The notes under the pieces were generated by a model, which saw only the letters and a list, made by a program, of their open reading frames with translations, had not been told where the DNA came from and did not search any database. From positions 62,001-126,000 of the IMG/VR virus record IMGVR_UViG_3300025536_000010: a stretch of DNA of 64,000 nt; one strand, 5' to 3'. A program made the translations under genes and the position numbers. Below are positions 2,710 through 47,690 of this stretch, in pieces (within the stretch, counting starts at the first letter, position 1; each line of letters begins with the position of its first letter).

Positions 2710-2810
2710 GAGGGACTCCGGGAGTCTGTGGCCTCCCGGGGAGCAACTGGCCCTGCCTGGATCGTTTCCGGGCAGGGCTTTCTCAAAACCGGCTTTTAGG
2801 AACGGACTCC

Positions 2811-3212
2811 ATGAACTACAACGGGATGACCTTCCTCGGCAACGGTTCCGTACTCAATCTGCAAGAAGATGTCGTCCGCTTCGGCCCGCTTCGCTTCTGG
2901 GCGGAACGTGGCCTGGTCCACGTTGAAGACGCGACCGACAACAGCTACGAAGTCATGTCAGTGCGGACCTTCCTCAGCCGCGCCCGCGGGCTGTCCGACA
3001 TGATCGGCAACTCGACCCAGCGCGAGATGCACAGCGAGGACCGCTATGACCAGATGGAGCGGACGCGCCACCTCACTTTCCTGGAAGGTGCGGCCAACCT
3101 CGCCCGCAAGGCCCAGATTCAGGGCATGCCCTCGGACCCCAGTGCCCGCCGCGAACTGGTGCGCCGGCGGCCCAAAAGCGTCGTCGTCCCCGCCTACGGC
3201 GGCGGCATGTAA
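2811..3212 (+). CDS. Hypothetical protein
   Basis: ATG 2811 (MNYNGMTF...), in frame with the listed 2556 ORF. Confidence 0.7.
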   Translation: MNYNGMTFLGNGSVLNLQEDVVRFGPLRFWAERGLVHVEDATDNSYEVMSVRTFLSRARGLSDMIGNSTQREMHSEDRYDQMERTRHLTFLEGAANLARKAQIQGMPSDPSARRELVRRRPKSVVVPAYGGGM

Positions 3213-3230
3213 CGAGACAAGGAGGCAGGG

Positions 3231-3644
3231 ATGCCACTTAACGCAAGGGAAGCATTCAAGGTTGGTTTCCTGGCCCGCTGCGTCGAGGACGGCTTGAGCC
3301 CCGACGAGATGCTGGACCGTGTCAAGTTCGCTGCTGAACTCCTGGAGAAGCGCGCCGGCATCATTAGCACGCTCGGCGGTAAACTGGCCGACGTCGGCCA
3401 GGGTATCGGCTCAGCGGCGCTCGGCTACGGCTTGCCGCTGGCCCTGGCGGCCCCACCCATTTTGGGCGGAGTCGCGGGCTACGGCTTAGCCAGAGCCACC
3501 GACATCGACGACACCGACATCGACGACGTCAAGGACCGCGAGGTCATGGACGAGTACGTCCGGCAGACAGCCAGGCTCAAACGGCAGCGGGCGGCGCGCG
3601 ACTACCAGAAGGCAAAGCAGCAGACAGGCCGGATCTTCATGTAA
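3231..3644 (+). CDS. Hypothetical K-x-A motif protein
   Basis: AAGGAGG SD; VKFA, EKRA followed by a Gly-rich hydrophobic segment. Confidence 0.75.
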   Translation: MPLNAREAFKVGFLARCVEDGLSPDEMLDRVKFAAELLEKRAGIISTLGGKLADVGQGIGSAALGYGLPLALAAPPILGGVAGYGLARATDIDDTDIDDVKDREVMDEYVRQTARLKRQRAARDYQKAKQQTGRIFM

Positions 3645-3659
3645 GCAGGGTGAACCCCT

Positions 3660-4966: not shown

Positions 4967-7900
4967 GTGGCTGGACTGCTGGCCGATTTCCCCAAGCCGA
5001 AAGCGCCAGCGCTGGACCTGCCCCAGACGAAGGCGCAGTCGATCTTGTCCAGCGGGCCGTTGACGGCCCCGCCTACCCCCGCGCCGCAAATGCGGGAGTT
5101 CGGCGATGCGCGCCTCACGCGCCAATACATCTACGAGGACGCCCTGAACGCCGCCCGCAACATCGAACCCATCGAAGACGAACGCTACCGCCTGCGGCTG
5201 GCCGACGTGGACTGGGCCGACCCGGAACGCTTCACGCGCAAGCAGCGCAAAGCGGCAATCCTGGCCGGCGACACGCTGGCTCGGCGCCTGCGCGGCAGCT
5301 GGGTATTGGAGGACGTTGCCACGGGTAAGGAGATCCAACGGCGCGCCCAGATCGTCGGCCGCATTCCTTACCTGTCCAGCATGGGCACGTTCGTCCACAA
5401 GGGGAACGAATACACCGTCAACCACCAGCAGCGATTGCGGCCCGGCGTCTTCGCCCGCGTCAAAGACAACGGCGAGATCGAGAGCCATGTCAACGTACTG
5501 CCGGGTAAGGGCGTCTCGCACCGCTACTTTCTGGACCCGGAGAAGGAACTGTTCAAGCTGCGGCTCGGACAGGCCGAGATGCCGCTGCTGCCGCTAGTCC
5601 AGGCCCTCGGCGCCACCGACAAGGAAGTCCGCGAGGCGTGGGGCGACCAGCTGTTCGCGGCCAACTACAAGCACCTGGACAGCGGCCAGACTATCAAGAA
5701 GCTGGCCGCGCGCCTGCTGCGCCGCGCCGACCAGGGTTTAGACGAAGGCACGACGCGGCAACGGCTGGCCGATACGATCAACCGTATGGAACTGGACCCG
5801 GAGGTCACCAAGCGCACGCTGGGCCAGCCGTACGCCAACCTAAACAAAGAAGTTATCCTCAACGCCACTAAAAAACTGATCCAGGTCAACCGCCGCGAAG
5901 TTGACCCCGACGACCGCGACAGCCTGGCCTACCAGCAATTCTTCGGCCCCGAAGACCTGTTCGCCGAGCGCCTGCGGCGGGACCACGGTAACCTGCGGAA
6001 ACAGCTGTTCAGGAAGATCGCCCTGGCCGGCAACCTGGACAAGATGCCCAGCGGCGCGCTGACGCCCCAGGTCGAGCAGGTGCTGCTCGGCAGCGGGCTC
6101 GCGCAGGCACTCGAAGAGATCAACCCGGCCGAAGTCTTCGATAAGCAGAGCCGTATCACGCGCATGGGCGAGGGCGGTATCCCAAGCCTAGACGCGATCC
6201 CCGACGAAGCCCGCGCCGTACAGCCGTCGCACATGGGTTTCATGGACCCGCTGCGGACACCGGAGAGCTTCCGCGTCGGCGTCGACCTGCACATGGCGCG
6301 CAGTTCGCGCAAAGGCCGCGACGGCCGCATCTACACGAGCCTCCGCGACCAGCAAGGGAACATGGTTTGGAAGTCCCCGCAGGACGTGGCTGAGGCAAGC
6401 ATCGCTACGCCGGACGTGCTCAAATGGGACACGAAGCGCGTGCCGGTGATGAAGGGAGGCAAGCTGGCCTATGTTCCGAAGAATGAAGTGGATTTTGTCC
6501 TACCTAACTTCGAGGACTCGTTTTCGCCGCTTGGTAACATGGTGCCGCTCAAGAGCATGGTCAAAGGCCAGCGCGTCGCAATGGCCAGTCGCATGCTCAC
6601 CCAGGCCCTCCCCCTCACCGCCGCCGAGGCTCCGCTTGTACAATCCGGCTTGCCTGGCAGTAAGGGCGCCCGGAGCTTCGAGGAAGAATACGGCAAGCAC
6701 ATGGGAGCAGTGGCGGCTGATTCGGACGGACGGGTCGTCGATGTCCGTGACGGAGTTATTAAGCTCAAGTACAACGACGGCCGCACCGACGAGGTCGAAC
6801 TCTACGAGAACCACCCGTTCAACCGGAAGACCTACATCAACCAGACCGCGGTAGTAAAACCAGGCGACGCGATTACGAAAGGACAGCTGCTGGCTCACAG
6901 CAACTACACCGACAAGACCGGGGCGACGGCGCTGGGCACAAACCTGAACGTCGCCTACTGGCCCTACCTGGGTTACAACTTCGAGGACGCGGTGGTGATC
7001 TCGGAGAGCGGGGCCAAGAAGATGTCCTCCGAGCACATGTACCAGCACGACTTGGAGGTCACGGACAAGCACAAGATCGGGAAGCGGCATTACGTCAACC
7101 TCTTCCCCGGTAAGTTCGACAAGAAGGCGTACGAGAACCTGGACGACGACGGCATTGTTCGGCCCGGCACCGTCGTCAACCACGGTGACCCGCTCATCCT
7201 GGCTGCGCGGCAGAAAGAGTTCGCGCAGAACAAGATCCACAAGAAAAAACAGGCAGGGTACGGCGATGAGTCTCTACTGTGGAAGCATCACGATCCTGGG
7301 GTTGTTACCGACGTCGTGTGGGGCAAAAACGGGCCTGTCGTCCTGGTTAAGTCCCAGTCTCAAATGCAAGTCGGCGACAAGCTCTCCGGCCGTTACGGCG
7401 ATAAAGGAGTGGTCGCGGCCATCGTCCCCGACAGCCAGATGCCGCACGGTCGGGACGGTAACCCCTTCGAGCTTCTCCTGAACCCGCTGGGCGTCATCAG
7501 CCGCACCAACCCGGCACAGAAAGTCGAGGCTCAGCTGGGCAAGATCGCGCGCTTGACCGGCAAGCCCGTCAAGGTGCCCGATTTCGAGGACGAGGAAGAC
7601 CTGACGGCCTGGGCACAAATGCAGCTGCGGATGCACGGCCTCAAGGACACCGAAGACATCGTCTGGCCCGAGAAAAACATGAAGGTGCCAGGCATCCACT
7701 CCGGTACGCGCTTCTTCATGAAGCTGCACCACACCGCCGAATCCAAAGGCCAGGGTCGCGGCGGTGGCTCCTATTCGATGGACGACACGCCGGCTAAAGG
7801 TGGCGCACAGGGTTGTTTCCTGGCCGGCACGCACCTGCATACGGCTGAGCACGGTTTTCAGGACATCGCCCGCATCGTCGGCCGGCGCATGCCTGTCAAA

Positions 7901-8113
7901 GTGCTGACTCGGCGGCCGGGCGGCGTACACCAGCAGTGGCTGCCGGTCACGGACTGGTTCCACTACCGGGTCGACGCAAACGCACTGGTGACGCTGCGGC
8001 TTGGTAACGGCCGGGAGATCCACGTCACCAGGAACCACGAGTTCGTCATGGCAGACGGCACGCGGAAACTGGCGGGCGACCTGGTCGCGGGCGACGACCT
8101 GATGGAGGTTTGA
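4967..8113 (+). CDS. rpoB: Phage RNA polymerase beta subunit (N-extein, 949 aa) fused to N-terminal split-intein half
   Basis: RpoB motifs GTFVHKGNEYTVNHQQRLRPGVF, HMGFMDPLRTPES, GYNFEDAVVIS, GDKLSGRYGDKGVV, LNPLGVISRTN, FMKLHH; ends in an intein-like CFLAGT...VTRNH. Confidence 0.93.
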   Translation: MAGLLADFPKPKAPALDLPQTKAQSILSSGPLTAPPTPAPQMREFGDARLTRQYIYEDALNAARNIEPIEDERYRLRLADVDWADPERFTRKQRKAAILAGDTLARRLRGSWVLEDVATGKEIQRRAQIVGRIPYLSSMGTFVHKGNEYTVNHQQRLRPGVFARVKDNGEIESHVNVLPGKGVSHRYFLDPEKELFKLRLGQAEMPLLPLVQALGATDKEVREAWGDQLFAANYKHLDSGQTIKKLAARLLRRADQGLDEGTTRQRLADTINRMELDPEVTKRTLGQPYANLNKEVILNATKKLIQVNRREVDPDDRDSLAYQQFFGPEDLFAERLRRDHGNLRKQLFRKIALAGNLDKMPSGALTPQVEQVLLGSGLAQALEEINPAEVFDKQSRITRMGEGGIPSLDAIPDEARAVQPSHMGFMDPLRTPESFRVGVDLHMARSSRKGRDGRIYTSLRDQQGNMVWKSPQDVAEASIATPDVLKWDTKRVPVMKGGKLAYVPKNEVDFVLPNFEDSFSPLGNMVPLKSMVKGQRVAMASRMLTQALPLTAAEAPLVQSGLPGSKGARSFEEEYGKHMGAVAADSDGRVVDVRDGVIKLKYNDGRTDEVELYENHPFNRKTYINQTAVVKPGDAITKGQLLAHSNYTDKTGATALGTNLNVAYWPYLGYNFEDAVVISESGAKKMSSEHMYQHDLEVTDKHKIGKRHYVNLFPGKFDKKAYENLDDDGIVRPGTVVNHGDPLILAARQKEFAQNKIHKKKQAGYGDESLLWKHHDPGVVTDVVWGKNGPVVLVKSQSQMQVGDKLSGRYGDKGVVAAIVPDSQMPHGRDGNPFELLLNPLGVISRTNPAQKVEAQLGKIARLTGKPVKVPDFEDEEDLTAWAQMQLRMHGLKDTEDIVWPEKNMKVPGIHSGTRFFMKLHHTAESKGQGRGGGSYSMDDTPAKGGAQGCFLAGTHLHTAEHGFQDIARIVGRRMPVKVLTRRPGGVHQQWLPVTDWFHYRVDANALVTLRLGNGREIHVTRNHEFVMADGTRKLAGDLVAGDDLMEV
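7814..8110 (+). other. Split intein N-half (IntN, 99 aa)
   Basis: Block A Cys1 (CFLAGT), block B TxxH (VTRNH), ends LAGDLVAGDDL then stop; no C-terminal Asn. Confidence 0.9.
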
Positions 8114-10030: not shown

Positions 10031-10149
10031 AAATAACTTCGGTAGAACCGTTCGCCGGCACTGCGGATCTGGAGGGGAAGGTGGACGTCTACGACATTAC
10101 CGTCGCGGACCTCCACCTTTACGGCGTCTACGGAGTGCTGGTGTCCAAC
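10027..10149 (+). other. Split intein C-half (IntC, 41 aa)
   Basis: MKITS...VYDITV..LH.Y...GVLVSN followed by +1 Ser (10150); same architecture as cyanobacterial DnaE IntC (MIKI...VYDIGV..DHNF....ASN). Confidence 0.9.
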
Positions 10150-11787
10150 AGCAAGCGCGTGGCCATGCTGGACACCAACGCCCTGCTGTCGCACGGGGCC
10201 ACGGAAACGCTGCGTGACGTCCGCCTGATTCGCGGCCAGGGCCGAGCCAGTGAGAACTACTGGCTCCAGTTCATGATGGGTTACACGCCGGTCGACCCCA
10301 AGGTGCCGCAGACGCACGAGAAGTTCGTCAACCAGCTGAAAGCCTCTGGCATCAACGTGGTCCGCGACGGCTACCAGATGAACGTCATGGCCCTGACCAA
10401 CCGGGACGTGGACACCCTGGCGTCCGACCGCATCATCAAGAGCGGGGACACCGTGCGCTTCGACAAGGAACTCAAACCGATCCCGGGTGGCCTGTTCGAT
10501 CCCACGCTCACCGGCGGACACAACGGTAAGCGCTGGGCGGCTATCGAACTGCCCGAACCGATGCCCAACCCGGTCATGGAGGAGCCGATCCGGCGCATGC
10601 TGAACCTGACCCAGAAACAGTTCAGCGCCGTCCTGGCGGGCGAGCACGAACTGCCTAGCTTCGGCAGCGGCCCCAAAGCGATCACCCAGGCCCTGGAGAA
10701 CATCAACCTGGAACGCGAGTTGGCCAAAGCCAAGGCCGAATACACCCACGGACGCGGTACAGCCCGCGACGCTGCGCACCGGCGCTGGCAGTATCTCGAC
10801 GGCGCCCAGAAGCGCGGTCTGCATCCCAAAGATTGGATACTGAACCGCGTGCCAGTGCTGCCGCCGGCCTTCCGCCCGGTCAGCGTCATGGGGGACTCCG
10901 GCGTACCCCTGGTGTCGGACCCCAACTACCTCTACAAGGAGTTGCTCGACGCCAACAAGAATTTCACGGACATGGTCAAGCAGGTGGGGGACAAGAACGT
11001 CGGCAACGAGCGGCTGGCGGTCTACAACTCGTTCAAGGCGGTTACCGGCCTGGGCGAGCCTGTTCACCCCAAGCTGATCGAGAAAAACGTGAAAGGCATT
11101 CTCAAATCCGTTTTTGGAACCTCGCCGAAGTTCGGCACGGTGCAGCGGAAACTGCTGTCCTCGACCGTCGACAACGTGGGCCGCTCGGTCATTACGCCGA
11201 ACCCTGACTACGATATGGACACCATCGGCGTGCCCGAGAACCAGGCGTTCGACGTCTACTCGAAGTTCATCGTCCGCCGCCTGCGCCGCCGGGGCCTACC
11301 GATCCGCGAGGCTCTCAAGCACGTCCGCGACAAATCGGGCCTGGCCCGGGACGTTCTCCAGGAAGAGATGGACAACCGGCCGGTCTATGTCAACCGGGCT
11401 CCGGTGCTGCACAAATTCGGTATCATGGCCTTCCGCCCGCGGTTGATTAAGGGGGACGTCCTCCAGGTCAGCCCGTTGATCGTCAAAGGCTTCAACGCTG
11501 ACTTTGACGGGGACGCCATGCAGTTTCACGTCCCGTCGTCCGATGAAGCGGTCAAGGAAGCCTACGAGCGGATGCTGCCCAGTCGCTCGCTGCTTAGCCC
11601 GGCCGATTTCAAAAGCCCGGTCCACGCTCCTGGCCAGGAGTACCTGGGCGGGCTCTACTACGCGACGCGCCAGCGTGAGGAAGACAAGCAGCGGCGGCCC
11701 CGCGTGTTCCGTTCCGTAGCCGACGCCAAGAAGGCGCACCAGCGCGGCGAGATCACAGCGGACACGCCGATTCAGATCATGGAGTAA
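10027..11787 (+). CDS. rpoC: C-terminal split-intein half + RNAP beta C-terminus + catalytic N-half of beta'
   Basis: After the IntC: SKRVAMLDTNALLSHGA...QLKASGINV (beta end), then GGLFDP, VPVLPPAFRP, NRAPVLH, FNADFDGDAM (11494-11514), GLYYAT. Confidence 0.93.
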   Translation: MKITSVEPFAGTADLEGKVDVYDITVADLHLYGVYGVLVSNSKRVAMLDTNALLSHGATETLRDVRLIRGQGRASENYWLQFMMGYTPVDPKVPQTHEKFVNQLKASGINVVRDGYQMNVMALTNRDVDTLASDRIIKSGDTVRFDKELKPIPGGLFDPTLTGGHNGKRWAAIELPEPMPNPVMEEPIRRMLNLTQKQFSAVLAGEHELPSFGSGPKAITQALENINLERELAKAKAEYTHGRGTARDAAHRRWQYLDGAQKRGLHPKDWILNRVPVLPPAFRPVSVMGDSGVPLVSDPNYLYKELLDANKNFTDMVKQVGDKNVGNERLAVYNSFKAVTGLGEPVHPKLIEKNVKGILKSVFGTSPKFGTVQRKLLSSTVDNVGRSVITPNPDYDMDTIGVPENQAFDVYSKFIVRRLRRRGLPIREALKHVRDKSGLARDVLQEEMDNRPVYVNRAPVLHKFGIMAFRPRLIKGDVLQVSPLIVKGFNADFDGDAMQFHVPSSDEAVKEAYERMLPSRSLLSPADFKSPVHAPGQEYLGGLYYATRQREEDKQRRPRVFRSVADAKKAHQRGEITADTPIQIME

Positions 11788-14132: not shown

Positions 14133-14216
14133 GAGTCCTCCTTTCGGCGGGCGTGGGTTACAAAGGATTGTGGCCCACGTCCGTTTTCTAAAAGCCAGTT
14201 TTGAGGGAGGGAGCCC

Positions 14217-19743: not shown

Positions 19744-22383
19744 ATGCAGGCCACCCAAAAGCCGTTTTTTGAAAAGCGGGCCACGGCGTTCGGCACCTAT
19801 TATGTGTCGTCTCTGCCAAAACTGGCCATCGCGCAGTACCTCCGCGAACGGTCGCTGTGTCGCATCAAGGAGGCGTCGCTCGGCGGCGACCAGGAGCAGG
19901 GCTTCGAGCAAGCCTTCTCGTCGCTGGCGTATGCCTACTTGAAAGACAAAAGCCCCCGCTTGCTGGACTTCATTGTGGGCTTTCAGCTGGTCGACCGCAA
20001 CGAAGACAACACGAAGGCGATGGGCGTCTTCGGTTTCAAGGTCGGCGATCAGTGGCTGTACGCGCCCGTTTTCTTCCTCAACGGCGACTTGAAGGGCCAC
20101 GAACTCCTGTACATCAAGAAACAGGATGCTTTCGTGCCCATGAAGGAGAACTGGGTCAACTACCTGATCTCCCGCAAGCCGCACACCCTGGGCGAAGGCA
20201 GCGAGCAGAACACGTTCGAGTTGGGCGGCCTCATGCCCAACATCTCGAAGCTGTCGCGGCTGCCCGGCGGCAGCAAGTACGGCTCGGACGGCGCAGCCAC
20301 CATGCCGGTCCACATCGACGACTGGGCCAAGCCGGCCCTGCCGCTCCTTATGGCCCTGGCCACGAAGAAAGCCCGCGCGCTTTACCCGGACATGGTCAAA
20401 GACGCCACCGACCTGAATTTCAAGTCGTTGGTGGGCAGCCCGGTGCGCGCGGCTCTGGCACCGTTCGCCGAGAACTTCGACCTGAACAAAGCGCTGACGC
20501 ACCCGACGCTGCTCAAGGTCGCCCGGCAGCTGTACGACGCCTACCCGCTCATCAAGGCGGGCTTCGACCGCTTCTACGGAGCAGACTTCTTCCCCAAGAT
20601 GGAGAAGCTGGCCCGCGACACGGCGGACAGCCTGGTCACCAAGGCGGCCGGGTCGTTCGTTGTGCCGCCCAAGCCGTACAAGAAAAAGCGGAAGGCGTCG
20701 CCGTTTCTGATCGAAGACCCCGAGCCCAAAAAGGCGTGGGACAAGAACGCCGAGATCACCGTTATCGCCCTGGACGTCGACAACGACGTGCCCATCACGG
20801 TCAACAAGAAAGAGTTGACCGAGGAGGAGCGGGCGCGGCTGCTGCGCGACACCGTCCTCATCAAGGACGAACGCGACCCGCACGGCGACAAAACCAGCAT
20901 CGCCTACAACACCCAGGTCCGCATGGAACTGGTCAACCCGAGCGAAACCGGCATCTACGAGGTGCTGGAAAAGCCGGGCTCTTTCGACAAGATGCTTATC
21001 ATCGCGGCCCCACACTCCGGGCGCGGGCAAGAGGACCATTGCGTTCTGATCCGCAAGGGTTCTCCCAGGAACTGGATCAACGCACACCGCACGACATTGT
21101 GGGCGAAGCAAACGGACGCCCCGACGCGCAAGGAGTGGGACGATTGGTACGAGTCGCTCAGTGGCACCAGCAGCCTGGAAAAGGGCGGCGTCTATGTTGC
21201 CGTCAACAAGAGCGGCTCGGGCACCTGTCCGTTCCGCGTCCGCGAGAACTACGGCGACGGCGTCTACCGGGTGGAGTGGAAAGACTACTGCTCCTACAAC
21301 CACGGCCGTCCGTCCTCGCTGCCGAAAATCGACCGGCCGCACGACTGGGAGATTGGCTACAGCGGCTGGGACGCCAAGCTGTACATCAACAAGCGCAAGG
21401 GCTCGAAGCTGCGCGTGGTCAACGGCGAGATGACTGTCCCCGAGGACTTCAAAATCATCACGGTGGCCAAGCCGCCGCCACCGCCGAAAAAGGACAAGAG
21501 CCTGGTCGACATGTGCTGTTCGTCGGAGTCGAGCAGCCGCGCCGAGGGCAGCGACGAGCGGCCGATCCAGCCAGGCAACCTGGCTGACGTCCAGATCATG
21601 CTCCAGAAGAACGCCCACGTCGTCAAGCTACACGACACCGGGGCCAGCGAGGTCTGGCTCAAGAGCCGGCGCGGCGACGAGCGTATGTCGAAGAAGGCAG
21701 CGCTCATCAGCCTGGTCCGCGATCACGGTACGAGCGAACACCAGGCCCGCGAGATGCTCAAGCAAGCCACCGTGGCGGCTGTCCACGGGCGGCCGGCGAC
21801 TTTCTACGTCAAGTACGCCCAGGGCTTCGGGCTCCAACCGGGGCCGAACGCCCCGCCGTTCCCTGAGCCCGAAATGGGCATGGAGCAGCACGGCTACAAC
21901 TCCACGCAGGCCATCTACCCGCAGGAGGAGTACCAGCCGGTCGACGAGATGTCGAGTCAGCTGACGGACCAGTCGATCTACGACCCCTTCTACACGCCGG
22001 ACCAGCAGGCGATGCAGGTCGCCCAGCAGGCATCGTCCAGCGGCCAGAAGGAGGTCTTCGACACGGCGATGATCTCGGGCATGCTCAAAGCCGTGCGCCA
22101 GGATAGCCTGGTGGATCGCTACTTGGGCGACCTGATGAAGGCCCTCGATAAGCTGGGCCGCATCCTGTTCATGTTCTACTGGCACTCGGAAGAGTTCGAG
22201 GATCGCTACGGCAAGCAAGACTTGCCCGAACTGGAAGACTCGCTGCGGAACGCCTTCGAGGTGTTGGGCGATGTCTGCCTCTTCCTCCAGGAGAAAACCG
22301 TTAAGGGCGCGACCGGCATGATGTCCGGCGTCGGCAACCCTGGCAAGGGCGAGCCCAGCGTGGAAGAGGCCGCCCGCAACTAA
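19744..22383 (+). CDS. Large hypothetical head-module protein (879 aa)
   Basis: ATG 19744 after GGAAGG; multiple K-x-A motifs (EKRA, IKEA, TKAA, QKNA, VKYA). Confidence 0.8.
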   Translation: MQATQKPFFEKRATAFGTYYVSSLPKLAIAQYLRERSLCRIKEASLGGDQEQGFEQAFSSLAYAYLKDKSPRLLDFIVGFQLVDRNEDNTKAMGVFGFKVGDQWLYAPVFFLNGDLKGHELLYIKKQDAFVPMKENWVNYLISRKPHTLGEGSEQNTFELGGLMPNISKLSRLPGGSKYGSDGAATMPVHIDDWAKPALPLLMALATKKARALYPDMVKDATDLNFKSLVGSPVRAALAPFAENFDLNKALTHPTLLKVARQLYDAYPLIKAGFDRFYGADFFPKMEKLARDTADSLVTKAAGSFVVPPKPYKKKRKASPFLIEDPEPKKAWDKNAEITVIALDVDNDVPITVNKKELTEEERARLLRDTVLIKDERDPHGDKTSIAYNTQVRMELVNPSETGIYEVLEKPGSFDKMLIIAAPHSGRGQEDHCVLIRKGSPRNWINAHRTTLWAKQTDAPTRKEWDDWYESLSGTSSLEKGGVYVAVNKSGSGTCPFRVRENYGDGVYRVEWKDYCSYNHGRPSSLPKIDRPHDWEIGYSGWDAKLYINKRKGSKLRVVNGEMTVPEDFKIITVAKPPPPPKKDKSLVDMCCSSESSSRAEGSDERPIQPGNLADVQIMLQKNAHVVKLHDTGASEVWLKSRRGDERMSKKAALISLVRDHGTSEHQAREMLKQATVAAVHGRPATFYVKYAQGFGLQPGPNAPPFPEPEMGMEQHGYNSTQAIYPQEEYQPVDEMSSQLTDQSIYDPFYTPDQQAMQVAQQASSSGQKEVFDTAMISGMLKAVRQDSLVDRYLGDLMKALDKLGRILFMFYWHSEEFEDRYGKQDLPELEDSLRNAFEVLGDVCLFLQEKTVKGATGMMSGVGNPGKGEPSVEEAARN

Positions 22384-22845: not shown

Positions 22846-22868
22846 CCCTAAAAAGTGGATTTTGAAAC

Positions 22869-26758: not shown

Positions 26759-28282
26759 ATGGCAATGGTGAAAATCGTGAGCCCGTGCGGCTGGGACTTC
26801 GACGGCCCAGTCGTGTCGCTCGTGAAAGTGGCGTCGCGTGGCCTCCGCGGCCACGACCGCGACCTGTTCATCAAGCGCGCCTACGGGTCTGCCAACGTCT
26901 TCCTGCCCTACCTGGACTCGGTGAAATTCGCAGCCGACGAGGAGCCGGTTCACCTGATCGCCCTGGGTGCCAGCGAAGCCTACGGGGCCAACCGCAACGG
27001 CGACGGCTTCAAAGAAGCGACCTGCAAGGCGTGCCACGATACGTTCGTGAAGTTTGCCAGGTTCTACCGCAACCACAAGAACAAAGACACGGCCATCTCC
27101 TACGGCCACGTCAAACTGTCGGCGTACAACCCAGTGATGCGCCGCGTCGAACTGCTGGTAGCCCTCAACAAGGAAAAGTCGGCGGTCGACCGCAACGGCG
27201 GTTTCGTGGCGGACAAGGAACTGGAGAAGCTCGCCAAGGGCCAGGACATTCCCGTCAGCATGGCCTGTCGCGTGCCCTACGACATCTGCTCGGAGTGTGG
27301 CAACAAGGCGCGCACCCGCGACGAATACTGCAAAGCGGCTTCCTGCCCAGGCGGTGGCTGCTCCGAAAACCTGACGAAGCTCGTCAAGAAGGGCAGCGAC
27401 GTACGCCACGTCCACGTCGACAATCCGACACCGCATTGGTTCGACATCAGCGCCGTGTTCCGTCCGGCCGACCGCATCGCCTACGGCAGCAGGGCCGACT
27501 GGCTCCAGAAGGCTGCGGCGGACGCCTGGGACGGCAGCTACGGTACGGACGGTGCGAAAATGGCGACCGACCTCCAGGTCATGGCCCCGCTGGCTGTCGT
27601 GCTGGCGATGGACACCATGCTCCCGGGCGAGTGGACGCCGTACCTGGGCGATCAGGTGAAGATCGCGCACGGCCTGGACCTGATGGAACAGCGGGAGCAC
27701 CTGCACGTCCACGACGAGGTCAAGCGGGCCTTTGCCGCTGACATGCAGCCGGACGTCGACCTGGTCGCCCTCGACCTTATCTCCGACAACCAGCAGAAGG
27801 TGGCCGCTGCCCTGGGGGCGCTGGCCGACCAGAAGATCGTCCTCTCGCTCCGCGATTTCGCCCGCATGACCAAGCGTGCGGATTTCACCGACGACGCCGG
27901 CAGCTGCCTCAAGGGCGTCTACGGACGTATGATTGCGGACGGCAGCCTGGAGAAACGTCTCGCCCAGAACAAGTACGCCCCTGCGGAGAAGCTGGCCAGC
28001 GTGAAACAGCGGCAGCTGGCCGCGACGATGCGGCAGACCTACGCCCTGGAAAAGCACGCCGTCGATCACCGCTGTCAGGTGTCAGCACTGCGGCAGCATC
28101 GGCTGCCGGAGTCCAAATCCACTTTTTGGAACGAGAAGAAAGCCCACGACAACACCACGGCTGAGGAACTCGCCAGGGACTACGCAATCTACAAGGTCGC
28201 TGCCCTGCGGCGTATCTCCCAGTTTGACGACGAGTTCCTCTTGACCGCACGCCTCAGCGCGTGCCAGAATCAGGTGGTCTAG
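26759..28282 (+). CDS. Putative prohead (capsid maturation) protease
   Basis: YRNH...VELL...VSMACRVPYDICSECGN (candidate His/Ser plus CxxC); lies directly upstream of the scaffold-like and capsid genes. Confidence 0.6.
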   Translation: MAMVKIVSPCGWDFDGPVVSLVKVASRGLRGHDRDLFIKRAYGSANVFLPYLDSVKFAADEEPVHLIALGASEAYGANRNGDGFKEATCKACHDTFVKFARFYRNHKNKDTAISYGHVKLSAYNPVMRRVELLVALNKEKSAVDRNGGFVADKELEKLAKGQDIPVSMACRVPYDICSECGNKARTRDEYCKAASCPGGGCSENLTKLVKKGSDVRHVHVDNPTPHWFDISAVFRPADRIAYGSRADWLQKAAADAWDGSYGTDGAKMATDLQVMAPLAVVLAMDTMLPGEWTPYLGDQVKIAHGLDLMEQREHLHVHDEVKRAFAADMQPDVDLVALDLISDNQQKVAAALGALADQKIVLSLRDFARMTKRADFTDDAGSCLKGVYGRMIADGSLEKRLAQNKYAPAEKLASVKQRQLAATMRQTYALEKHAVDHRCQVSALRQHRLPESKSTFWNEKKAHDNTTAEELARDYAIYKVAALRRISQFDDEFLLTARLSACQNQVV

Positions 28283-31980: not shown

Positions 31981-32021
31981 AGGGGTGCCCGGGGGTTGGG
32001 AGAGGCTCTCGGGCACCTTTT
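31981..32021 (+). terminator. Intrinsic terminator after the MCP
   Basis: GGTGCCCG...CGGGCACC stem followed by TTTT. Confidence 0.65.
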
Positions 32022-32057
32022 CTAAAAGCCAGTTTTTGACGCGCAGGGAGGCGTATC

Positions 32058-32950: not shown

Positions 32951-33011
32951 CGGGGACAACCGCAGCGTTCTCTAAACCACTTTTTGAAACCAGCAGGATG
33001 GAGGAGATACC

Positions 33012-33464: not shown

Positions 33465-33526
33465 CCCGCGCCTGACCACGGACGGACATCGCGCAAGCGA
33501 AGCCCATACACAAGGAGGTAGCCAGC

Positions 33527-33889: not shown

Positions 33890-33917
33890 CAACCCGCCGG
33901 TTCATGCTTCCCGCGCG

Positions 33918-33956
33918 ACGGCGGGCGCACCCTCCCCCGGGTCGCCCGCCGTTTTT
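33918..33956 (+). terminator. Intrinsic terminator
   Basis: ACGGCGGGCG...CGCCCGCCGT followed by TTTT. Confidence 0.65.
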
Positions 33957-33976
33957 ATTGGACACGGAGGTCTACC

Positions 33977-40085: not shown

Positions 40086-40143
40086 TCTAAAAAATGGTTT
40101 TGAACGGAGGCTAGCCTCGCACATGCGAAAGGAGAACGAAGGA

Positions 40144-42284: not shown

Positions 42285-42335
42285 GCCAGCCTTGACGTCG
42301 AGAACCGAAAGACCCATGCTACCCTTATAGGGAGT

Positions 42336-43244
42336 ATGGGCCTTTTTCTTACCTATCAGCCAGGGACGGCGATGGAAACCAACTGCCAGGTCTGCCCTCC
42401 CCAATGCGCGTCGGTCTTCGACCGCGTTGTGGTTAGCCACCTGATCCGCGGCCAGACCCGCGTCATGTGGGAACTGCTCGACACTTTCACAGACCCAGGC
42501 CCGCTCACCTTCCAGCTGCAAGTTGGCACCACGAACAACTCGGACGCAGACGACTGGGAAGACGTCGGCCTGCCTGTGGTCGATCAGTATTTCGCGTTCG
42601 ACCCGGACCAGCGCGTTTGGGGCAAAACGAACTGGACGCACTACCGCGTCGCGCTGACGACGAGTCTGGGCACCTACACCAGCGCACCAACTGGCGGCAT
42701 GGGCATCTTGCCGCGCCGCTGGTGGCGGCTAGCCCGCAACGTCGTCCGACAGCGACTGGTGGAGTTCAACAAAGGCCCTGGCGGCCAGGAAGGCTACCTG
42801 CTCAAACGGCGCTGGACCGGCGAGAACTGCCCCACTTGCCTCGACTACCAGACCAGAGAAAGTCGCAACCCGGACTGCCCCGACTGCTACGGCACCGGCA
42901 AGAAGTGCGGCTACTTCTACCCGATGGCCTGCGTCTGGGCTGAGTTGTCTCCCAAGGCCCACCACACCGACCTGGACGCCGGCCAGGGCCGCGCCACGGT
43001 CAACGACATCATCGTCAGCGCCAAAATGGCGGCTACCTACCTGATGTCCGAAGGAGACGTTTGGGTCGCCAAGGAATCGGACGACCGTTACTACGTTCAC
43101 GAGGTCCAGCACACCAGCGAGATGAAAGGCGTGCCGTTGGTGGCCGAGGTGAAAATGCGGCCGGTGCCGTTCACGTCAGCTGTCTACAGCATTGCGATCC
43201 CTCAGCAAGACGAGGCCAAAGACACGCCCGAGGAGGACGACTGA
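42336..43244 (+). CDS. Putative neck / head-closure protein with Cys cluster
   Basis: LLKRRWTGENCPTC...DCPDCYGTG; first gene of the tail module; start may instead be 42372. Confidence 0.55.
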   Translation: MGLFLTYQPGTAMETNCQVCPPQCASVFDRVVVSHLIRGQTRVMWELLDTFTDPGPLTFQLQVGTTNNSDADDWEDVGLPVVDQYFAFDPDQRVWGKTNWTHYRVALTTSLGTYTSAPTGGMGILPRRWWRLARNVVRQRLVEFNKGPGGQEGYLLKRRWTGENCPTCLDYQTRESRNPDCPDCYGTGKKCGYFYPMACVWAELSPKAHHTDLDAGQGRATVNDIIVSAKMAATYLMSEGDVWVAKESDDRYYVHEVQHTSEMKGVPLVAEVKMRPVPFTSAVYSIAIPQQDEAKDTPEEDD

Positions 43245-44180: not shown

Positions 44181-44211
44181 CCACACTCTTTACGCACGGA
44201 GGCATGCCAGG

Positions 44212-47067
44212 ATGGCTACTTACGTTCTGCCGCAAGTTCTGGTGTTCCAGGACTTCCGCATTGTCCCTTCCGCTGTTGCCAACCCCCTGCGGGCGCACAT
44301 CTCCGGCGGCCACGCGAAGCTGATTCGCTATGCCGATGAAGACGAGCGCGAAGACGGGCGGCTTGGCGTCTACGACCGCTTGCTGGCAACCAGCTACCTC
44401 TGGCCCGAACGGCCGGCGGGCGGCAAAGCCAACTTCGAGTACGTCAAGCTCTGGATGAAGGACGCGCTGCTCCTGTACTTCCAGGACACCATCGGTGCCG
44501 GTTCCACCATCACCAAGCTGACCGGCTACAACAACCGCGTGAAGTCGGCCTCCGTGAGCTTCGCCGAGAACGCGGACGATCCCGATACCTACCCGCGCAA
44601 CGCCGCCTTGCTGGACCGCGACGTCAAGGCCGGCGATGTAGTCAAGGTCCGCGGCATCACCGACGACGACGAGTCGGTAACCCTCTGGACCTACGTCAAG
44701 AGCGTCATCGGCGAGGAAGTCGCCTCGACCATCGCGTCGGCGACCAGCGACGCCAGCAACGCCGACACGCAGTCGGCGGACAGCAGCGTCACGCAGATCG
44801 CCGGTGTCGAAAACTGCGTCACGTTGACCCCGGATCATTCGGCCTACGACGGCCTGGAGTCCGGCGACATCAACGAAACCTATGACATCATCGTCATCCA
44901 GGGCTCGGTGAACGGCGACTTCACCACGGCCAAGCTGCGCATCCTGTCCGGCTCTGGCGACGACGACGTCGCCGAAGTCACCCCGGAGGCAGCCGGCGAC
45001 CCCACCGACATCGGCACCCGCGGCCTCACCGTGACCTTCGACAAGGACGCCGGCCCGGCTTGCTCCGACTCTGCGGAAGCCGAAGAAGTCACGGCGGACG
45101 ACCTGCACGTCGGGCAGCGTTGGCAGGTGAGCGTTTCGCAGTCGTTCACGGCCCCCACGCCGACCAGCGGCGGCGATTACGAGGGTGACAACGACACGAC
45201 CTACATCGTCACGGTGTCGCGCGGCGGACTGTACGCGGCCGACGTGCCGCCGCAGATCAAGGTGACCACGACCAACGGCGTCGACATGAGCGGCCCGACC
45301 AGCATCACGGCTGCGTCGACCGAGTTCGAGATCGGCACCAACGCCGTGACCATCGAGTTCACCGGCACCGGCCTGCGCACGGGCGACCGTTACTACGTCG
45401 ACGTGACCGGCATCAAGGAAGGGCCGATGCGGATCATCGAGTTGGGGCACAACCTCAACACCGACATTCCGGCCGGCAGCGAAGTCGACCTGACGCTGTT
45501 CATCCGCAAGCCGCTCCTCCAGATCGAGCAGAACCGCCAGGGTTTTGCCCCGCTGACCAACTGGGACGTCAGCGAGACGGAGATCACCGTCAACGAAGGC
45601 ATCATCGCTTACGACGAGACGTGGACCGACTCGGGCGTGCAGCAGGCGCTGGACGTCTACTCGGAGTCGTCCAAGAGCTACGGCGTCCTCTTCGTCGAGG
45701 TGCGCTACTGGCTCCAGGATCTCTGTCACGAGGTCGGCACGCTCCAGGACGTGGGCCTCATCAACGACCAGATCTCCGGTGCCCTGCACCCGGACAACCC
45801 TTTGAAGTGGGGTGTGTTCAAGGCGCTGGAGAACAGCAACGGCGCGGAGGTGAAGTACACCTCTGTCTGCGACCCCGACGATGACGAGTCGTGGGCGGAC
45901 GTGCTGGAACTGCTGCTCGGGCGTGACGACGTCTACGGCCTCGTGCCGCTGACCCGCCGCCGCGTGCCGCTCGACCTGTACGCCGCGCACGTCAAGGCGA
46001 TGTCCAGCCCCGAGCAGGGCCTGTGGCGCGTCCTGTGGGTCAACCAGGAAGGCATCCCGGAGATCCCGGTGGTGTCGGCCGGTTCGACCGTCCAGGGACA
46101 CGTCGAGGCCACCACCTCGGACGGCGAACACGCCCTGGGTGTCGTCAGCGATGATGCGTTGACCTCGGGCAGCCAGTACACCATTCTGCGCTGCACCAGC
46201 GGCAACGCGGACTTCATCGCCAACGGCGTGCAGGCCGGCGACGTCGTGCGGATGCTCTACACCGGCGACGGCTTCGGCAACGAAGAGTACAGCGAATACC
46301 TGGTGGACGAGGTGCAGGCCGAAGACCAGCTGCGGTTGCTAACCGGCCCCGACGCGCCGATCAGCGTGGCTGCCAAGTTCGAGGTTTGGCGGAACTTGAC
46401 GGCGACCGAAGAGGCCGACGAGATCGCACGCAACTCCGGGGCCTGGGGCGACCGGCGCATCCGGTCCACCTGGCCCGACCGGATCGAGTCGGCCGGCACG
46501 GTGATGGAAGGCTACTTCCTCAACGCCGCGCTCGCCGGGCTGCGTTCCGGCGTGCTGCCACACCAAGGTATGACGCACCTGGAGATCGTCGGCTTCACGG
46601 ACGTTCCGCGGTCGACCAGCAAGTTCAACCGGGCGCAGCTGGACACCCTGGCCCTGGGCGGCACCTGGGTCGTCACGCAGGATCTGCGCGGGCTGGAAAC
46701 GGACCTCGGCCAGATCTTCTCCCGGCACGCGCTGACGACGGGCGGCTACAGCGACATCAACCAGCGGGAAGAAATGCTGACGGCAAACGTCGACAGCATC
46801 AGCTACCGCTTCAAAGACCACTTCAAGCCCTTCATCGGCGTGACGAACGTCACGCCGGTCATCCAGAAGCGGTTGCAAGTGGAAGTGGAAAACCTGGTCG
46901 AGGTGCTCAAGACGGAAGCGGAAACGCAAAACTTGGGCGGCCAGCTGATCTCGGGCACCATCGTCGAGCTTCGTCCGCACCTGACGCTGCTCGACCGCTA
47001 CGTTCTCAAAATGAACATCGTGGTGCCCTATCCGTTCAACAACTTCGAGATCCACCTGATGATCTAA
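44212..47067 (+). CDS. Contractile tail sheath protein
   Basis: Starts MATYVLPQVLVFQDF; sheath-type C-terminus NVDSISY...FIG..N...VPYPFNNFEIHL; followed by the tube gene. Confidence 0.8.
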   Translation: MATYVLPQVLVFQDFRIVPSAVANPLRAHISGGHAKLIRYADEDEREDGRLGVYDRLLATSYLWPERPAGGKANFEYVKLWMKDALLLYFQDTIGAGSTITKLTGYNNRVKSASVSFAENADDPDTYPRNAALLDRDVKAGDVVKVRGITDDDESVTLWTYVKSVIGEEVASTIASATSDASNADTQSADSSVTQIAGVENCVTLTPDHSAYDGLESGDINETYDIIVIQGSVNGDFTTAKLRILSGSGDDDVAEVTPEAAGDPTDIGTRGLTVTFDKDAGPACSDSAEAEEVTADDLHVGQRWQVSVSQSFTAPTPTSGGDYEGDNDTTYIVTVSRGGLYAADVPPQIKVTTTNGVDMSGPTSITAASTEFEIGTNAVTIEFTGTGLRTGDRYYVDVTGIKEGPMRIIELGHNLNTDIPAGSEVDLTLFIRKPLLQIEQNRQGFAPLTNWDVSETEITVNEGIIAYDETWTDSGVQQALDVYSESSKSYGVLFVEVRYWLQDLCHEVGTLQDVGLINDQISGALHPDNPLKWGVFKALENSNGAEVKYTSVCDPDDDESWADVLELLLGRDDVYGLVPLTRRRVPLDLYAAHVKAMSSPEQGLWRVLWVNQEGIPEIPVVSAGSTVQGHVEATTSDGEHALGVVSDDALTSGSQYTILRCTSGNADFIANGVQAGDVVRMLYTGDGFGNEEYSEYLVDEVQAEDQLRLLTGPDAPISVAAKFEVWRNLTATEEADEIARNSGAWGDRRIRSTWPDRIESAGTVMEGYFLNAALAGLRSGVLPHQGMTHLEIVGFTDVPRSTSKFNRAQLDTLALGGTWVVTQDLRGLETDLGQIFSRHALTTGGYSDINQREEMLTANVDSISYRFKDHFKPFIGVTNVTPVIQKRLQVEVENLVEVLKTEAETQNLGGQLISGTIVELRPHLTLLDRYVLKMNIVVPYPFNNFEIHLMI

Positions 47068-47186
47068 GCATCAGGTAGCGAAGCACCAGCCCCGGGGCCT
47101 GGACGGCCCCGGGGTGTCTCAATCCTAACAAGGAAGCCGCTGCGGGCCTGGTAAACCGCGGCTAAACCGCACGGAGGTTTCTCGAA

Positions 47187-47645
47187 ATGGCAGACGTGTA
47201 TACGAAAGCCGAAGTCGATTTCGGCGGGGCCATGACGGCCGAAAAGGGCATCGTCGTGCAGTTCGGTGTGCTGCTCCAGAACATCCAGCTGCAATACAGT
47301 CAGAACGTGACCCGGCTCTACGAGTTGGGCAAGGCCGGCGGGAAGACGAAGGTCTACTACGTCTCCGGCCGGTCGCAGGGACAGGCCACGCTCGCGCACG
47401 TCATCGGGCCGGGCGATCAGGTCAAGCAGTTCTACGAAAAGTACGGTGACGTTTGTCAAGCCGACGTCAACTCGCTCGATCTGGACGTCGAGCCGAACAC
47501 CTGCGCCGCGAAGGGCGGCCCTTCCATCAAGTCGTGGAAGTGCAAGTATTGCGTCCTCATCAACGTCGGCATGTCCGTGGCCGCGCAGGACTTCGTCATC
47601 AACACGCAGGGTACGGTCATGTTCTCCGGCCTGGAAGTCAACTAA
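47187..47645 (+). CDS. Tail tube protein
   Basis: 152 aa after the sheath; QNIQLQYSQNVTRLYELG...YYVSGR. Confidence 0.75.
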   Translation: MADVYTKAEVDFGGAMTAEKGIVVQFGVLLQNIQLQYSQNVTRLYELGKAGGKTKVYYVSGRSQGQATLAHVIGPGDQVKQFYEKYGDVCQADVNSLDLDVEPNTCAAKGGPSIKSWKCKYCVLINVGMSVAAQDFVINTQGTVMFSGLEVN

Positions 47646-47690
47646 CCAGGCACGCCGCGCAGTCATAGGCTAAAAGCCAGATTTTGGATC

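What the first reader, a model, noticed from the sequence alone, without database searches (positions are those of the whole stretch)
2783..47687. Dispersed A-tract/T-tract pseudo-palindrome at gene boundaries (at least 8 copies)
Seen, consensus CTAAAA-(GCCAG-like core)-TTTTGA: 2783-2799 (minus strand CTAAAAGCCGGTTTTGA), 14188-14204 CTAAAAGCCAGTTTTGA, 19755-19772 CCAAAAGCCGTTTTTTGA, 22848-22865 CTAAAAAGTGGATTTTGA, 32022-32039 CTAAAAGCCAGTTTTTGA, 32972-32987 CTAAACCACTTTTTGA, 40087-40103 CTAAAAAATGGTTTTGA, 47670-47687 CTAAAAGCCAGATTTTGG. Seven of the eight are intergenic and most lie shortly before a start codon, in a genome where such AT runs are rare. Weaker copies occur in coding DNA (about 11102 and 28113). 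Inference: a binding site for a dimeric phage protein (repressor, nucleoid/packaging factor or the ParB-like protein) or a promoter element of the phage RNAP. Its occurrence in both orientations favours an operator-type site.
Basis: partly seen in the sequence, partly recalled or inferred. Interest (0 to 1): 0.68.

Follow-up and report, generated by a model that had tools for sequence, protein, structure and literature searches.

The report
Dispersed palindromic protein-binding sites, jumbo phage
A short A-tract/T-tract near-palindrome is scattered at fairly even intervals, between and inside genes, through an uncultured giant phage and its distant relatives, and it looks like the docking site of a phage ParB/Noc-like DNA-binding protein rather than a promoter.

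Summary
All ten listed copies are at the stated coordinates.

The window is bases 62001-126000 of a 234,886-bp phage record. It is 62% GC, about 98% of its genes lie on one strand, and it encodes its own multisubunit RNA polymerase. Genome-wide I count 18 intergenic and 14 intragenic copies. Codon-preserving shuffles give 0.11 and 1.08.

Distant relatives (core proteins about 40% identical) carry the same architecture with a lineage-specific core: GCCAG here, GTAC in one relative, TCCGGA in others. Copies often sit at orthologous positions. One intragenic copy encodes the same peptide (SKSTFW) in two genomes, but with different serine codons that produce each genome's own core.

Several features argue for a double-stranded DNA site bound by a dimeric phage protein, not a promoter or RNA element:
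- Spacing is more regular than random in four genomes.
- Asymmetric cores occur in both orientations.
- Many copies lie deep inside genes.
- One conserved locus has the order motif, then terminator, then gene.
- The RNA form does not fold.

The best candidate binder lies outside the window at genome 210110-211063. It has a ParB/Noc-type helix-turn-helix fold, an invariant GGRKP motif and a coiled coil. It is present in all six motif-bearing genomes and in none of five motif-less contigs. Its own gene is preceded by the motif in six lineages. Binding itself is untested.

The parts
2783..2799 (.). Motif copy TCAAAACCGGCTTTTAG, intergenic. It lies 3 nt after a GC-rich hairpin and 11 nt before ATG 2811.
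   Evidence: Orthologous copies precede the same gene in relatives G002 and G003.
2749..2779 (+). Terminator-like hairpin (about -27 kcal/mol) directly upstream of copy 2783.
11102..11117 (.). Weak copy TCAAATCCGTTTTTGG inside the beta'-N gene, encoding LKSVFG. It may be a by-product of a conserved peptide.
   Evidence: The orthologous stretch in G002 is not a proper motif.
14188..14204 (.). Motif copy CTAAAAGCCAGTTTTGA, intergenic. It lies 2 nt after a hairpin plus T-run and 12 nt before GTG 14217.
   Evidence: Copies also precede the beta'-C gene in G001, G002, G005 and G011 (L003).
14146..14185 (+). Terminator-like hairpin (about -30 kcal/mol) directly upstream of copy 14188.
19755..19772 (.). 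Copy CCAAAAGCCGTTTTTTGA within codons 4-10 of the 879-aa gene 19744-22383.
22848..22865 (.). Copy CTAAAAAGTGGATTTTGA with the core in the opposite orientation. It fills the whole gap between stop 22845 and ATG 22869.
28113..28129 (.). Intragenic copy CCAAATCCACTTTTTGG in the 507-aa gene 26759-28282, encoding SKSTFW. Relative G001 has a copy at the exact orthologous position.
32022..32039 (.). Copy CTAAAAGCCAGTTTTTGA directly after the hairpin that follows the major-capsid-like gene, 18 nt before ATG 32058.
31981..32020 (+). Terminator-like hairpin (about -39 kcal/mol for the 70-nt upstream stretch folded) after the capsid-like gene 30989-31930.
32972..32987 (.). Copy CTAAACCACTTTTTGA, intergenic, 24 nt before GTG 33012.
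   Evidence: Orthologous copies occur in G002 and G003.
40087..40103 (.). Copy CTAAAAAATGGTTTTGA, 1 nt after stop 40085 and 19 nt before ATG 40123.
47670..47687 (.). Copy CTAAAAGCCAGATTTTGG, followed by a terminator hairpin and then the 917-aa gene 47760-50513. The order motif, hairpin, gene is conserved in all four genomes compared.
47691..47714 (+). Terminator-like hairpin (-25.8 kcal/mol) downstream of copy 47670.

Best explanation
The motif is a double-stranded DNA recognition site for a phage-encoded protein that probably binds as a dimer. It is repeated about 30 times along the genome at fairly even intervals, wherever it can be fitted. Preferred places are the tiny gaps between a stop and the next start codon. 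Where no gap is available, it sits inside genes, using rare AAA/TTT codons.

The most likely binder is the 317-aa protein at genome 210110-211063, outside the window. It has a ParB/Noc-type helix-turn-helix domain that would read the GC core. It also has an invariant R-x-GGRKP motif, like an AT-hook, that could lie in the narrow minor groove of the A/T tracts. A long coiled coil could provide pairing.

Shown here:
- The site is real, ancient and under selection at the DNA level.
- It is independent of orientation.
- It co-evolves genome by genome.
- It co-occurs with this protein.

Inferred:
- This protein binds the site.
- The bound sites act globally, as a regulator or roadblock in the manner of KorB operators or stoperators, or as a genome organiser in the manner of Noc sites. 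They are not core promoters.
For: Enrichment:
- Copies are enriched in four genomes, both between and inside genes, against codon-preserving shuffles.

Symmetry and orientation:
- G001 to G003 carry perfect or near-perfect dyads with lineage-specific cores.
- The asymmetric forms occur in both orientations. In G003 the split is 11:12. For the G000 core at intergenic copies it is 13:7.

Positional conservation:
- Sites sit at orthologous positions despite about 40% protein identity.
- By hand from those counts, 5 of 11 and 5 of 10 testable G000 boundaries also carry a site in G001 and G002. About 0.5 would be expected in each.
- The peptide SKSTFW is written TCC AAA TCC ACT TTT TGG in G000 and TCA AAA AGT ACT TTT TGG in G001. 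Each version gives that genome's own core and uses rare codons.

Spacing:
- The coefficient of variation of spacing is 0.44-0.63, against about 0.95 for random placement. P ranges from 5e-5 to 1e-2.

Against an RNA element or promoter:
- The RNA form is unstructured, with free energies from 0 to -1.4 kcal/mol in most copies and z-scores at or above 0.
- The order motif, terminator, gene is conserved upstream of the 917-aa gene.
- A separate bipartite promoter-like motif exists.

Candidate protein:
- Pfam finds DUF1016_N at 2e-8 and HTH_ParB at 4e-4.
- RxGGRKP is invariant across 20 homologues.
- The structure model has a mean pLDDT of 80.
- The twelve best structural matches are all Noc, ParB or Spo0J DNA-binding domains, with Z 8.6-10.5 and about 100 residues aligned.
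- The protein is present in 6 of 6 motif-bearing genomes and in 0 of 5 motif-less relatives.
- The motif lies directly upstream of its gene in G000, G001, G002, G003, G005 and the contig of P0019.
Against: - No binding data exist.
- The Pfam HTH_ParB score (20.8 bits) is below the curated cut-off (22.6), and Z about 10 is within the range that helical domains can reach by chance.
- The presence/absence pattern is confounded by phylogeny: it contrasts one clade with another, and the motif-less contigs are only 45-88% complete.
- In this genome the intergenic copies have directional flanks (CT on the left in 17 of 20, G on the right in 16 of 20). They sit 2-25 nt before start codons, often right after terminator hairpins. 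A core promoter would also look like this.
- No other repeated motif in the window could serve as a promoter, and sigma-70-type matches are not enriched there.
- A-tract to T-tract length varies from 12 to 14 bp, which is unusual for a rigid dimer site.
Confidence: 0.55

Rival explanations
1. The motif is the core promoter of the phage's own multisubunit RNA polymerase. It would be an AT-rich element centred near -10, with transcription starting at its 3' edge. That would give very short or absent leaders. Intragenic copies would be internal promoters that keep transcription going along a 235-kb one-directional genome.
For: - It is the only strongly enriched non-Shine-Dalgarno intergenic word.
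- Intergenic copies lie 2-25 nt before start codons and often immediately after strong hairpins.
- The flanks are directional in this genome.
- In the shortest cases the motif centre lies 10-13 nt before the ATG.
- Jumbo phages with their own polymerases have phage-specific AT-rich motifs of about 10 nt centred near -10 (PMC7598289).
- The number and spacing of copies resemble phage promoter counts.
- Sigma-70-like sites are not enriched in the window.
Against: - Relatives have perfect dyad symmetry, and asymmetric cores occur in both orientations relative to uniformly oriented genes.
- Many copies lie 0.5-3 kb from the next start, deep inside genes.
- The order motif then terminator is conserved in four genomes.
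- A distinct bipartite motif that looks like a -35/-10 pair exists beside a conserved phage sigma factor.
Confidence: 0.2
2. The motif is a target of a DNA-processing enzyme or a host factor rather than a regulator. Candidates are a type II topoisomerase or gyrase strong site relieving supercoiling in a one-directional genome, a site-specific nickase or nuclease, or a modification enzyme.
For: - Spacing is regular and independent of orientation.
- The palindromic 4-6 bp cores (GTAC, CCGG, TCCGGA) resemble sites cut or modified symmetrically.
- Copies are tolerated inside genes.
Against: - No enzyme candidate was identified.
- The conserved candidate protein has no nuclease or transferase domain, only helix-turn-helix plus coiled coil.
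- Topoisomerase sites are usually far more degenerate than this 14-18 bp consensus.
- Lineage-specific cores argue for a phage-encoded reader, not a host one.
Confidence: 0.1
3. The motif acts in the mRNA. It could be an unstructured AU-rich landing pad that boosts translation, or allows re-initiation, of the next gene. It could also be a cleavage site for an endoribonuclease.
For: - The Shine-Dalgarno sequence or the start codon follows immediately.
- Several downstream genes have no separate Shine-Dalgarno sequence.
- The RNA is unstructured.
- The upstream stop codon is often the TAA at the motif's edge.
Against: - Dyad symmetry is irrelevant to a single-stranded reader.
- Cores occur in both orientations, so the RNA sequence differs between copies.
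- Deep intragenic copies have no start codon nearby.
- Conserved cores change in concert across each genome.
Confidence: 0.05

Closest known systems
Noc-binding sites (NBS) and parS of the ParB/Noc family
   Same: - These are 14-16 bp dyad-symmetric sites read by a ParB-type helix-turn-helix domain.
- NBS are scattered around the chromosome, including inside genes (PMC4331003, PMC8429893).
- The candidate protein's residues 40-160 superpose on the Noc-NBS and ParB-parS DNA-binding domains (Z about 10).
   Different: - The candidate has no ParB N-terminal CTPase domain (only DUF1016_N and HTH_ParB were found).
- No ParA-type ATPase is present in the genome.
- The site has A-tract, GC core, T-tract order, unlike NBS or parS.
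- The host is a lytic-looking jumbo phage, not a chromosome or plasmid.
KorB operators (OB) of plasmid RK2
   Same: A ParB-family protein acts as a global regulator through palindromic operators dispersed over the replicon. Some are at promoters and some far from them (PMC11790492). The regulator's own operon carries a site.
   Different: - The OB core is T-tract, AGCGGCT, A-tract, which is the inverse arrangement.
- KorB is a CTP-dependent sliding clamp with partner KorA. Neither feature is seen here.
17-bp dyad-symmetric repeats of Cluster O mycobacteriophages
   Same: There are more than 30 copies of a short repeat with dyad symmetry throughout a phage genome. Many are intergenic and about a third are in coding regions. 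They show no orientation with transcription, their function is unknown, and they are predicted to bind a dimeric protein (PMC4351075).
   Different: - The sequence is different (TGTTCGG-N3-CCGAACA).
- The phages are small actinophages without their own RNA polymerase.
- No regular spacing, cross-lineage core turnover or candidate binder was reported there.
Stoperators of Cluster A mycobacteriophages (L5 repressor sites)
   Same: More than twenty short sites lie in the small spaces between genes of a phage genome. They are bound by one phage protein that blocks transcription (PMC9283540).
   Different: Stoperators are asymmetric 13-mers bound by a monomer. They are strictly oriented with transcription, and reversing them abolishes function. 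The sites here are dyads used in both orientations. The phage shows no sign of lysogeny (not specifically searched).
Early promoters of phiKZ-like and AR9-like jumbo phages
   Same: These are phage-specific, AT-rich, roughly 10-nt conserved motifs upstream of operons in phages that carry multisubunit RNA polymerases (PMC7598289).
   Different: Those motifs are asymmetric, oriented and upstream of genes only. Those phages carry two polymerase sets, whereas this one has a single set plus a sigma-family protein.

Membership tests
ParB/Noc/KorB protein with dispersed palindromic sites | Dyad-symmetric site of about 14-16 bp | tested here: met
   G001 to G003 have perfect or near-perfect 14-20 bp dyads. 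In G000 the site is a quasi-dyad with an asymmetric 5-bp core.
ParB/Noc/KorB protein with dispersed palindromic sites | Cognate protein with a ParB-type helix-turn-helix DNA-binding domain | tested here: inconclusive
   Pfam HTH_ParB gives E 4e-4 but 20.8 bits, below the 22.6 cut-off. The twelve best structural matches are all Noc, ParB or Spo0J domains at Z 8.6-10.5, a range that helical folds can reach by chance. No PDB relative is found by sequence.
ParB/Noc/KorB protein with dispersed palindromic sites | N-terminal ParB CTPase domain (sliding-clamp function) | tested here: not met
   There is no ParB_N hit in the candidate. The only ParB_N hits in the genome are two other proteins that are not conserved in the relatives.
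ParB/Noc/KorB protein with dispersed palindromic sites | ParA-type partner ATPase (partition function) | tested here: not met
   PF13614 finds nothing in the genome, while the same search hits all 14 control genomes.
ParB/Noc/KorB protein with dispersed palindromic sites | Physical binding of the protein to the site | not testable with these tools
   Only indirect support is available: co-occurrence in 6 of 6 against 0 of 5 genomes, and the motif upstream of the protein's own gene in six lineages.
Jumbo-phage RNA polymerase promoters | Conserved AT-rich element upstream of operons | tested here: met
   Intergenic copies lie 2-25 nt before start codons.
Jumbo-phage RNA polymerase promoters | Fixed orientation relative to the transcribed genes | tested here: not met
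   The core occurs in both orientations: 13:7 in G000 intergenic copies and 11:12 in G003. About 98% of genes are on one strand.
Jumbo-phage RNA polymerase promoters | Transcript 5' ends at a fixed distance from the motif | not testable with these tools
   Only one DNA run, from a subsurface metagenome, holds this sequence. There is no RNA run.
Mycobacteriophage stoperators | Asymmetric site strictly oriented with transcription | tested here: not met
   The sites have dyad symmetry and occur in both orientations. The criterion is taken from PMC9283540.
Intrinsic terminators or RNA hairpin elements | Stable RNA hairpin | tested here: not met
   Minimum free energies run from 0 to -1.4 kcal/mol for six of eight copies, no better than shuffles. 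No Rfam family matches in the window.

The most novel reading that the evidence does not exclude
A ParB/Noc-fold protein that has lost the CTPase clamp and gained an AT-hook-like motif and a coiled coil marks a giant phage genome at about 30 evenly spread sites. It would work as a genome-wide switch or scaffold. One possibility is a repressor that is titrated away as the genome replicates, timing late expression. Another is a set of anchors that organise the replicating DNA. The requirement for the DNA site would be strong enough to dictate protein sequence: the SKSTFW insertion, with its serine codon switching between the TCN and AGY families as the recognised core changed.
Probability: 0.15. 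Interest if true: 0.8.

Novelty: new variant of a known kind. Interest (0 to 1): 0.6.

Why it matters
- It defines a cis-element and a plausible trans-factor shared by a whole lineage of uncultured jumbo phages that carry a bacterial-type RNA polymerase and a sigma factor. Nothing is known about gene control in this group.
- It gives a clean natural example of a DNA site and its reader changing together across all copies of a genome while the positions stay fixed. It also shows a DNA signal overriding codon choice inside a protein.
- It offers a candidate explanation for the unexplained dyad repeats seen in other phages, such as Cluster O mycobacteriophages.
- The idea is directly testable with synthetic protein and oligonucleotides, without culturing the phage.

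Tried and rejected
- **Closest cultured relatives.** Megablast against the phage collection found nothing. A protein search found only 22-29% identical polymerase subunits.
- **Exact-motif scan of viral contigs.** It returned 7 contigs, a number I estimate (no computation was run) is about what chance gives. Four were one unrelated locus, so this was dropped.
- **PHROGs.** Twenty window proteins gave almost nothing.
- **RNA data.** No RNA run holds this sequence.
- **RNA hairpin or terminator reading.** Rejected, because the folding energies are near zero.
- **Sigma-54, FliA-type, ECF-type, Bacteroidetes-type promoter and IHF or DnaA-box resemblances.** Considered by eye and rejected for wrong spacing or mismatches. 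This was reasoning only, not a tool test.
- **T7-like single-subunit polymerase.** No hit, but the control search found nothing either, so this is uninformative.
- **CsrA.** A phage homologue exists.
- **Gene-loss comparison with the motif-less contig G004.** Inconclusive, because that contig lacks the whole region where the candidate gene would lie.
- **Generic promoter/terminator scanner.** It missed the hairpins next to the motif because of its T-run rule, and it showed no sigma-70 enrichment.
No Pfam hit, and it is not conserved.

Full report
**What the window is**

The window is bases 62001-126000 of a single 234,886-bp virus record, rated complete by CheckV. The record is 62% GC. My codon-usage gene caller places 261 of 266 genes on the plus strand, covering 93% of the sequence.

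The window encodes the only set of multisubunit RNA polymerase genes in the genome:
- beta at 4967-8113
- the N-terminal part of beta' at 10027-11787
- the C-terminal part of beta' at 14627-18658

It also holds a head module with a major-capsid-like gene at 30989-31930 and a sigma-70-family protein at 61377-62105 (Sigma70_r3 E 1.8e-9). No close cultured relative exists. The only public run that holds the sequence is a subsurface metagenome DNA run. No RNA run holds it.

Yes.
- The consensus with up to three mismatches gives 4 hits in the window against 0.06 expected.
- Every A4-N(3-7)-T4 in the window is one of the listed sites. The mirrored control T4-N-A4 occurs once.
- CTAAAAG is the most enriched intergenic 7-mer in the genome, 11 intergenic and 0 elsewhere.
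- A loose pattern finds 18 intergenic and 14 coding places. Codon-preserving shuffles give 0.11 and 1.08.

The motif is therefore real. The title 'at gene boundaries' covers only about half of the copies.

**Anatomy in this genome**

The 20 intergenic copies read CT-A(3-6)-core-T(3-5)-G-R.
- The span from the start of the A-tract to the end of the T-tract is 12-14 bp.
- The core is usually GCCAG, GCCAC or GCCGG, or its reverse complement. The C-rich form is on the plus strand in 13 copies and the G-rich form in 7.
- The flanks keep a direction: C at -2 in 18 of 20, T at -1 in 17 of 20, and G at +1 in 16 of 20.
- Copies lie 2-25 nt before a start codon.
- Several copies directly follow a strong GC-rich hairpin with a T-run. 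Examples in window coordinates are 2749-2779, 14146-14185 and 31981-32020.
- Two copies precede a hairpin instead (47670 in the window, and genome 39967).
- In several cases the upstream gene ends at the TAA formed by the left flank.
- Intragenic copies are read as Q/S-K-x-x-F. They use AAA and TTT, which make up only 28% of Lys codons and 16% of Phe codons here.

**Relatives**

The C-terminal beta' piece found 14 related viral contigs at 51-67% identity. I fetched four of them whole and called genes the same way. In G000 to G003, 97-98% of genes are on one strand; in G004, 127 of 139 are. Shared proteins average about 40% identity to this genome. G002 and G003 are 58% identical to each other.

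Three relatives carry the same architecture with a different core:

| Genome | Motif |
|---|---|
| G000 (this genome) | CTAAAAGCCAGTTTTGA |
| G001 | YYAAAAAGTACTTTTTRR |
| G002 | TTAAAATCCGGATTTTAA and variants |
| G003 | AAAATCCGGAATTT and variants |

Counts against shuffles:

| Genome | Intergenic / coding, observed | Intergenic / coding, shuffled |
|---|---|---|
| G001 | 10 / 5 | 0 / 0.07 |
| G002 | 11 / 15 | 0.17 / 0.97 |
| G003 | 10 / 18 | 0 / 0.5 |

The more distant contigs G004 and G006 to G010 show no such motif. In G004 it is also absent at the orthologous positions.

**Positional conservation and concerted change**

Many sites lie at orthologous places although the core differs.
- Upstream of the 917-aa gene (window 47670): a site in all four genomes, 90-98 nt before the start.
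- Upstream of the 437-aa gene at genome 226088: a site in all four, 27-28 nt before the start.
- Window 2783 and 32972: matching sites in G002 and G003.
- The beta'-C gene: preceded by a site in G001, G002, G005 and G011 (L003).
- By hand from the counts, 5 of 11 and 5 of 10 testable G000 boundaries also carry a site in G001 and G002. About 0.5 would be expected in each.

The clearest case is window 28113. G000 and G001 share the peptide SKSTFW, which is missing from G002 to G004. G000 writes it TCC AAA TCC ACT TTT TGG. G001 writes it TCA AAA AGT ACT TTT TGG. Each version produces that genome's own core. AGT and TCA are each about 5% of serine codons in G001. This shows selection on the DNA sequence itself, and a recognised sequence that changed across a whole genome while the positions stayed.

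**Features that separate the explanations**

1. **Spacing.** In all four genomes spacing is more regular than random placement. The coefficient of variation is 0.51, 0.44, 0.63 and 0.55 against about 0.95, with P of 5e-5, 1.5e-3, 1e-2 and 7.5e-4.
2. **Orientation.** The sites are dyads. Where they are asymmetric, both orientations are used. In G003 the two inner W positions are A,A in 11 copies and T,T in 12, which are reverse complements of each other.
3. **Position.** Many copies are 0.5-3 kb from the next start.
4. **Conserved order.** Upstream of the 917-aa gene the order stop, motif, terminator hairpin, conserved leader, start is kept in all four genomes. A promoter firing straight into a terminator would be odd, unless this is an attenuator.
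5. **RNA folding.** The RNA form does not fold, and no Rfam family matches in the window.
6. **Another promoter-like motif.** A separate, properly asymmetric bipartite motif, GCTAAA-N17-(T)GTCA(C/T)A(A)TA, occurs in G000 (3 copies), G001 (2) and G004 (6). It is a plausible target of the conserved sigma-like protein.
7. **Host-type promoters.** By eye, sequences resembling host-type promoters occur in long intergenic regions outside the window.

Taken together these favour a double-stranded DNA site read by a symmetric protein. They count against a core promoter or an RNA signal.

**A candidate reader**

Among the 77 proteins shared by the four genomes, I scanned the small ones against Pfam. 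Only one has a DNA-binding signature suited to a dyad: the 317-aa protein at genome 210110-211063.
- Pfam finds DUF1016_N (2e-8) and HTH_ParB (4e-4, below the cut-off).
- Its 24 metagenomic homologues and three orthologues share an invariant R-x-GGRKP motif, which resembles an AT-hook. This is followed by a long helical region and a lysine-rich tail.
- The structure model (mean pLDDT 80) has residues 40-160 matching Noc, ParB and Spo0J DNA-binding domains. These are the twelve best matches, with Z 8.6-10.5 and about 100 residues aligned, before a drop to Z 7.1.
- There is no ParB CTPase domain in the protein and no ParA in the genome.
- The protein is found in all six motif-bearing genomes (G000, G001, G002, G003, G005, G011).
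- It is found in none of five motif-less contigs. Those contigs are only 45-88% complete and form a separate clade.
- The motif lies directly upstream of its gene in G000, G001, G002, G003, G005 and the contig that encodes homologue P0019.
- The gene sits at the end of the replication and recombination module: Mre11-like, Rad50-like, helicases, a primase-like protein and a family A polymerase.

**What remains open**

Binding is not shown. The directional CT...G flanks of the intergenic copies in this genome are only partly explained by stop-codon use. So is their tight packing between terminator and start codon. These features keep the promoter reading alive at about one in five.

I could not map transcript ends either.

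What the bound sites do is inference from analogues. They could act in global repression or as roadblocks, as with KorB operators or stoperators. They could act in genome organisation, as with Noc sites. The closest described phenomenon in phages is the unexplained 17-bp dyad repeats of Cluster O mycobacteriophages (PMC4351075).

No other genetic code was used. 

Noticed in passing
window 1208-1252 and 42313-42358; also genome 40038 and 232035; L005 and L006 just upstream of position 10001: A second conserved intergenic signal: a GC-rich hairpin, a T-run, then TA(C/G)CTAT(C/T)RG. It occurs about four times per genome and is shared by relatives, including those that lack the palindrome. It could be a special terminator tail or another promoter class.
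   Followed up: partly
genome 40977, 150536 and 229801 (outside the window); G004 32656-34080, 104650, 105677 and 133901: A bipartite, oriented, promoter-like motif GCTAAA-N17-(T)GTCA(C/T)A(A)TA in long intergenic regions. It is a plausible target of the phage sigma-like protein.
   Followed up: partly
window 61377-62105: A 242-aa sigma-70-family protein (region 3 clear, region 4 weak) lies inside the structural and tail gene block. It is conserved in all relatives examined, including the motif-less G004.
   Followed up: partly
genome 56956-57159, minus strand (about 5 kb before the window): A 67-aa homologue of the RNA-binding translational regulator CsrA, recognised by eye from its sequence. 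It is conserved in G001 to G003.
   Followed up: no
L042:11480-12250 (relative G001, about 151.5-152.2 kb): A CRISPR-like array in a related phage: 11 copies of a 36-nt repeat with unique spacers and a period of 72-73 nt.
   Followed up: partly
window 30989-31930: The major-capsid-like protein is 80-86% identical among genomes whose other shared proteins average about 40%. A small hairpin is visible in its leader in G001, G002 and G003; none was clear in G000.
   Followed up: no
window 33977-37897: A 1306-aa protein with collagen triple-helix repeats (Pfam E 1.5e-61).
   Followed up: no
window 28113-28129 and G001 64002-64017: The peptide SKSTFWNE is present only in the two genomes that have a motif copy there. 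It sits in an indel region of the protein, as if the insertion exists to carry the DNA site.
   Followed up: yes
genome 51313-51525 (outside the window): A 70-aa stand-alone GerE/LuxR-type helix-turn-helix protein (Pfam E 3.5e-16). It is another possible DNA-binding regulator and was not in the list of proteins shared by G000 to G003.
   Followed up: no
genome 200875-204267 (outside the window): A family A DNA polymerase fused to a uracil-DNA-glycosylase-superfamily domain and a 3'-5' exonuclease.
   Followed up: no
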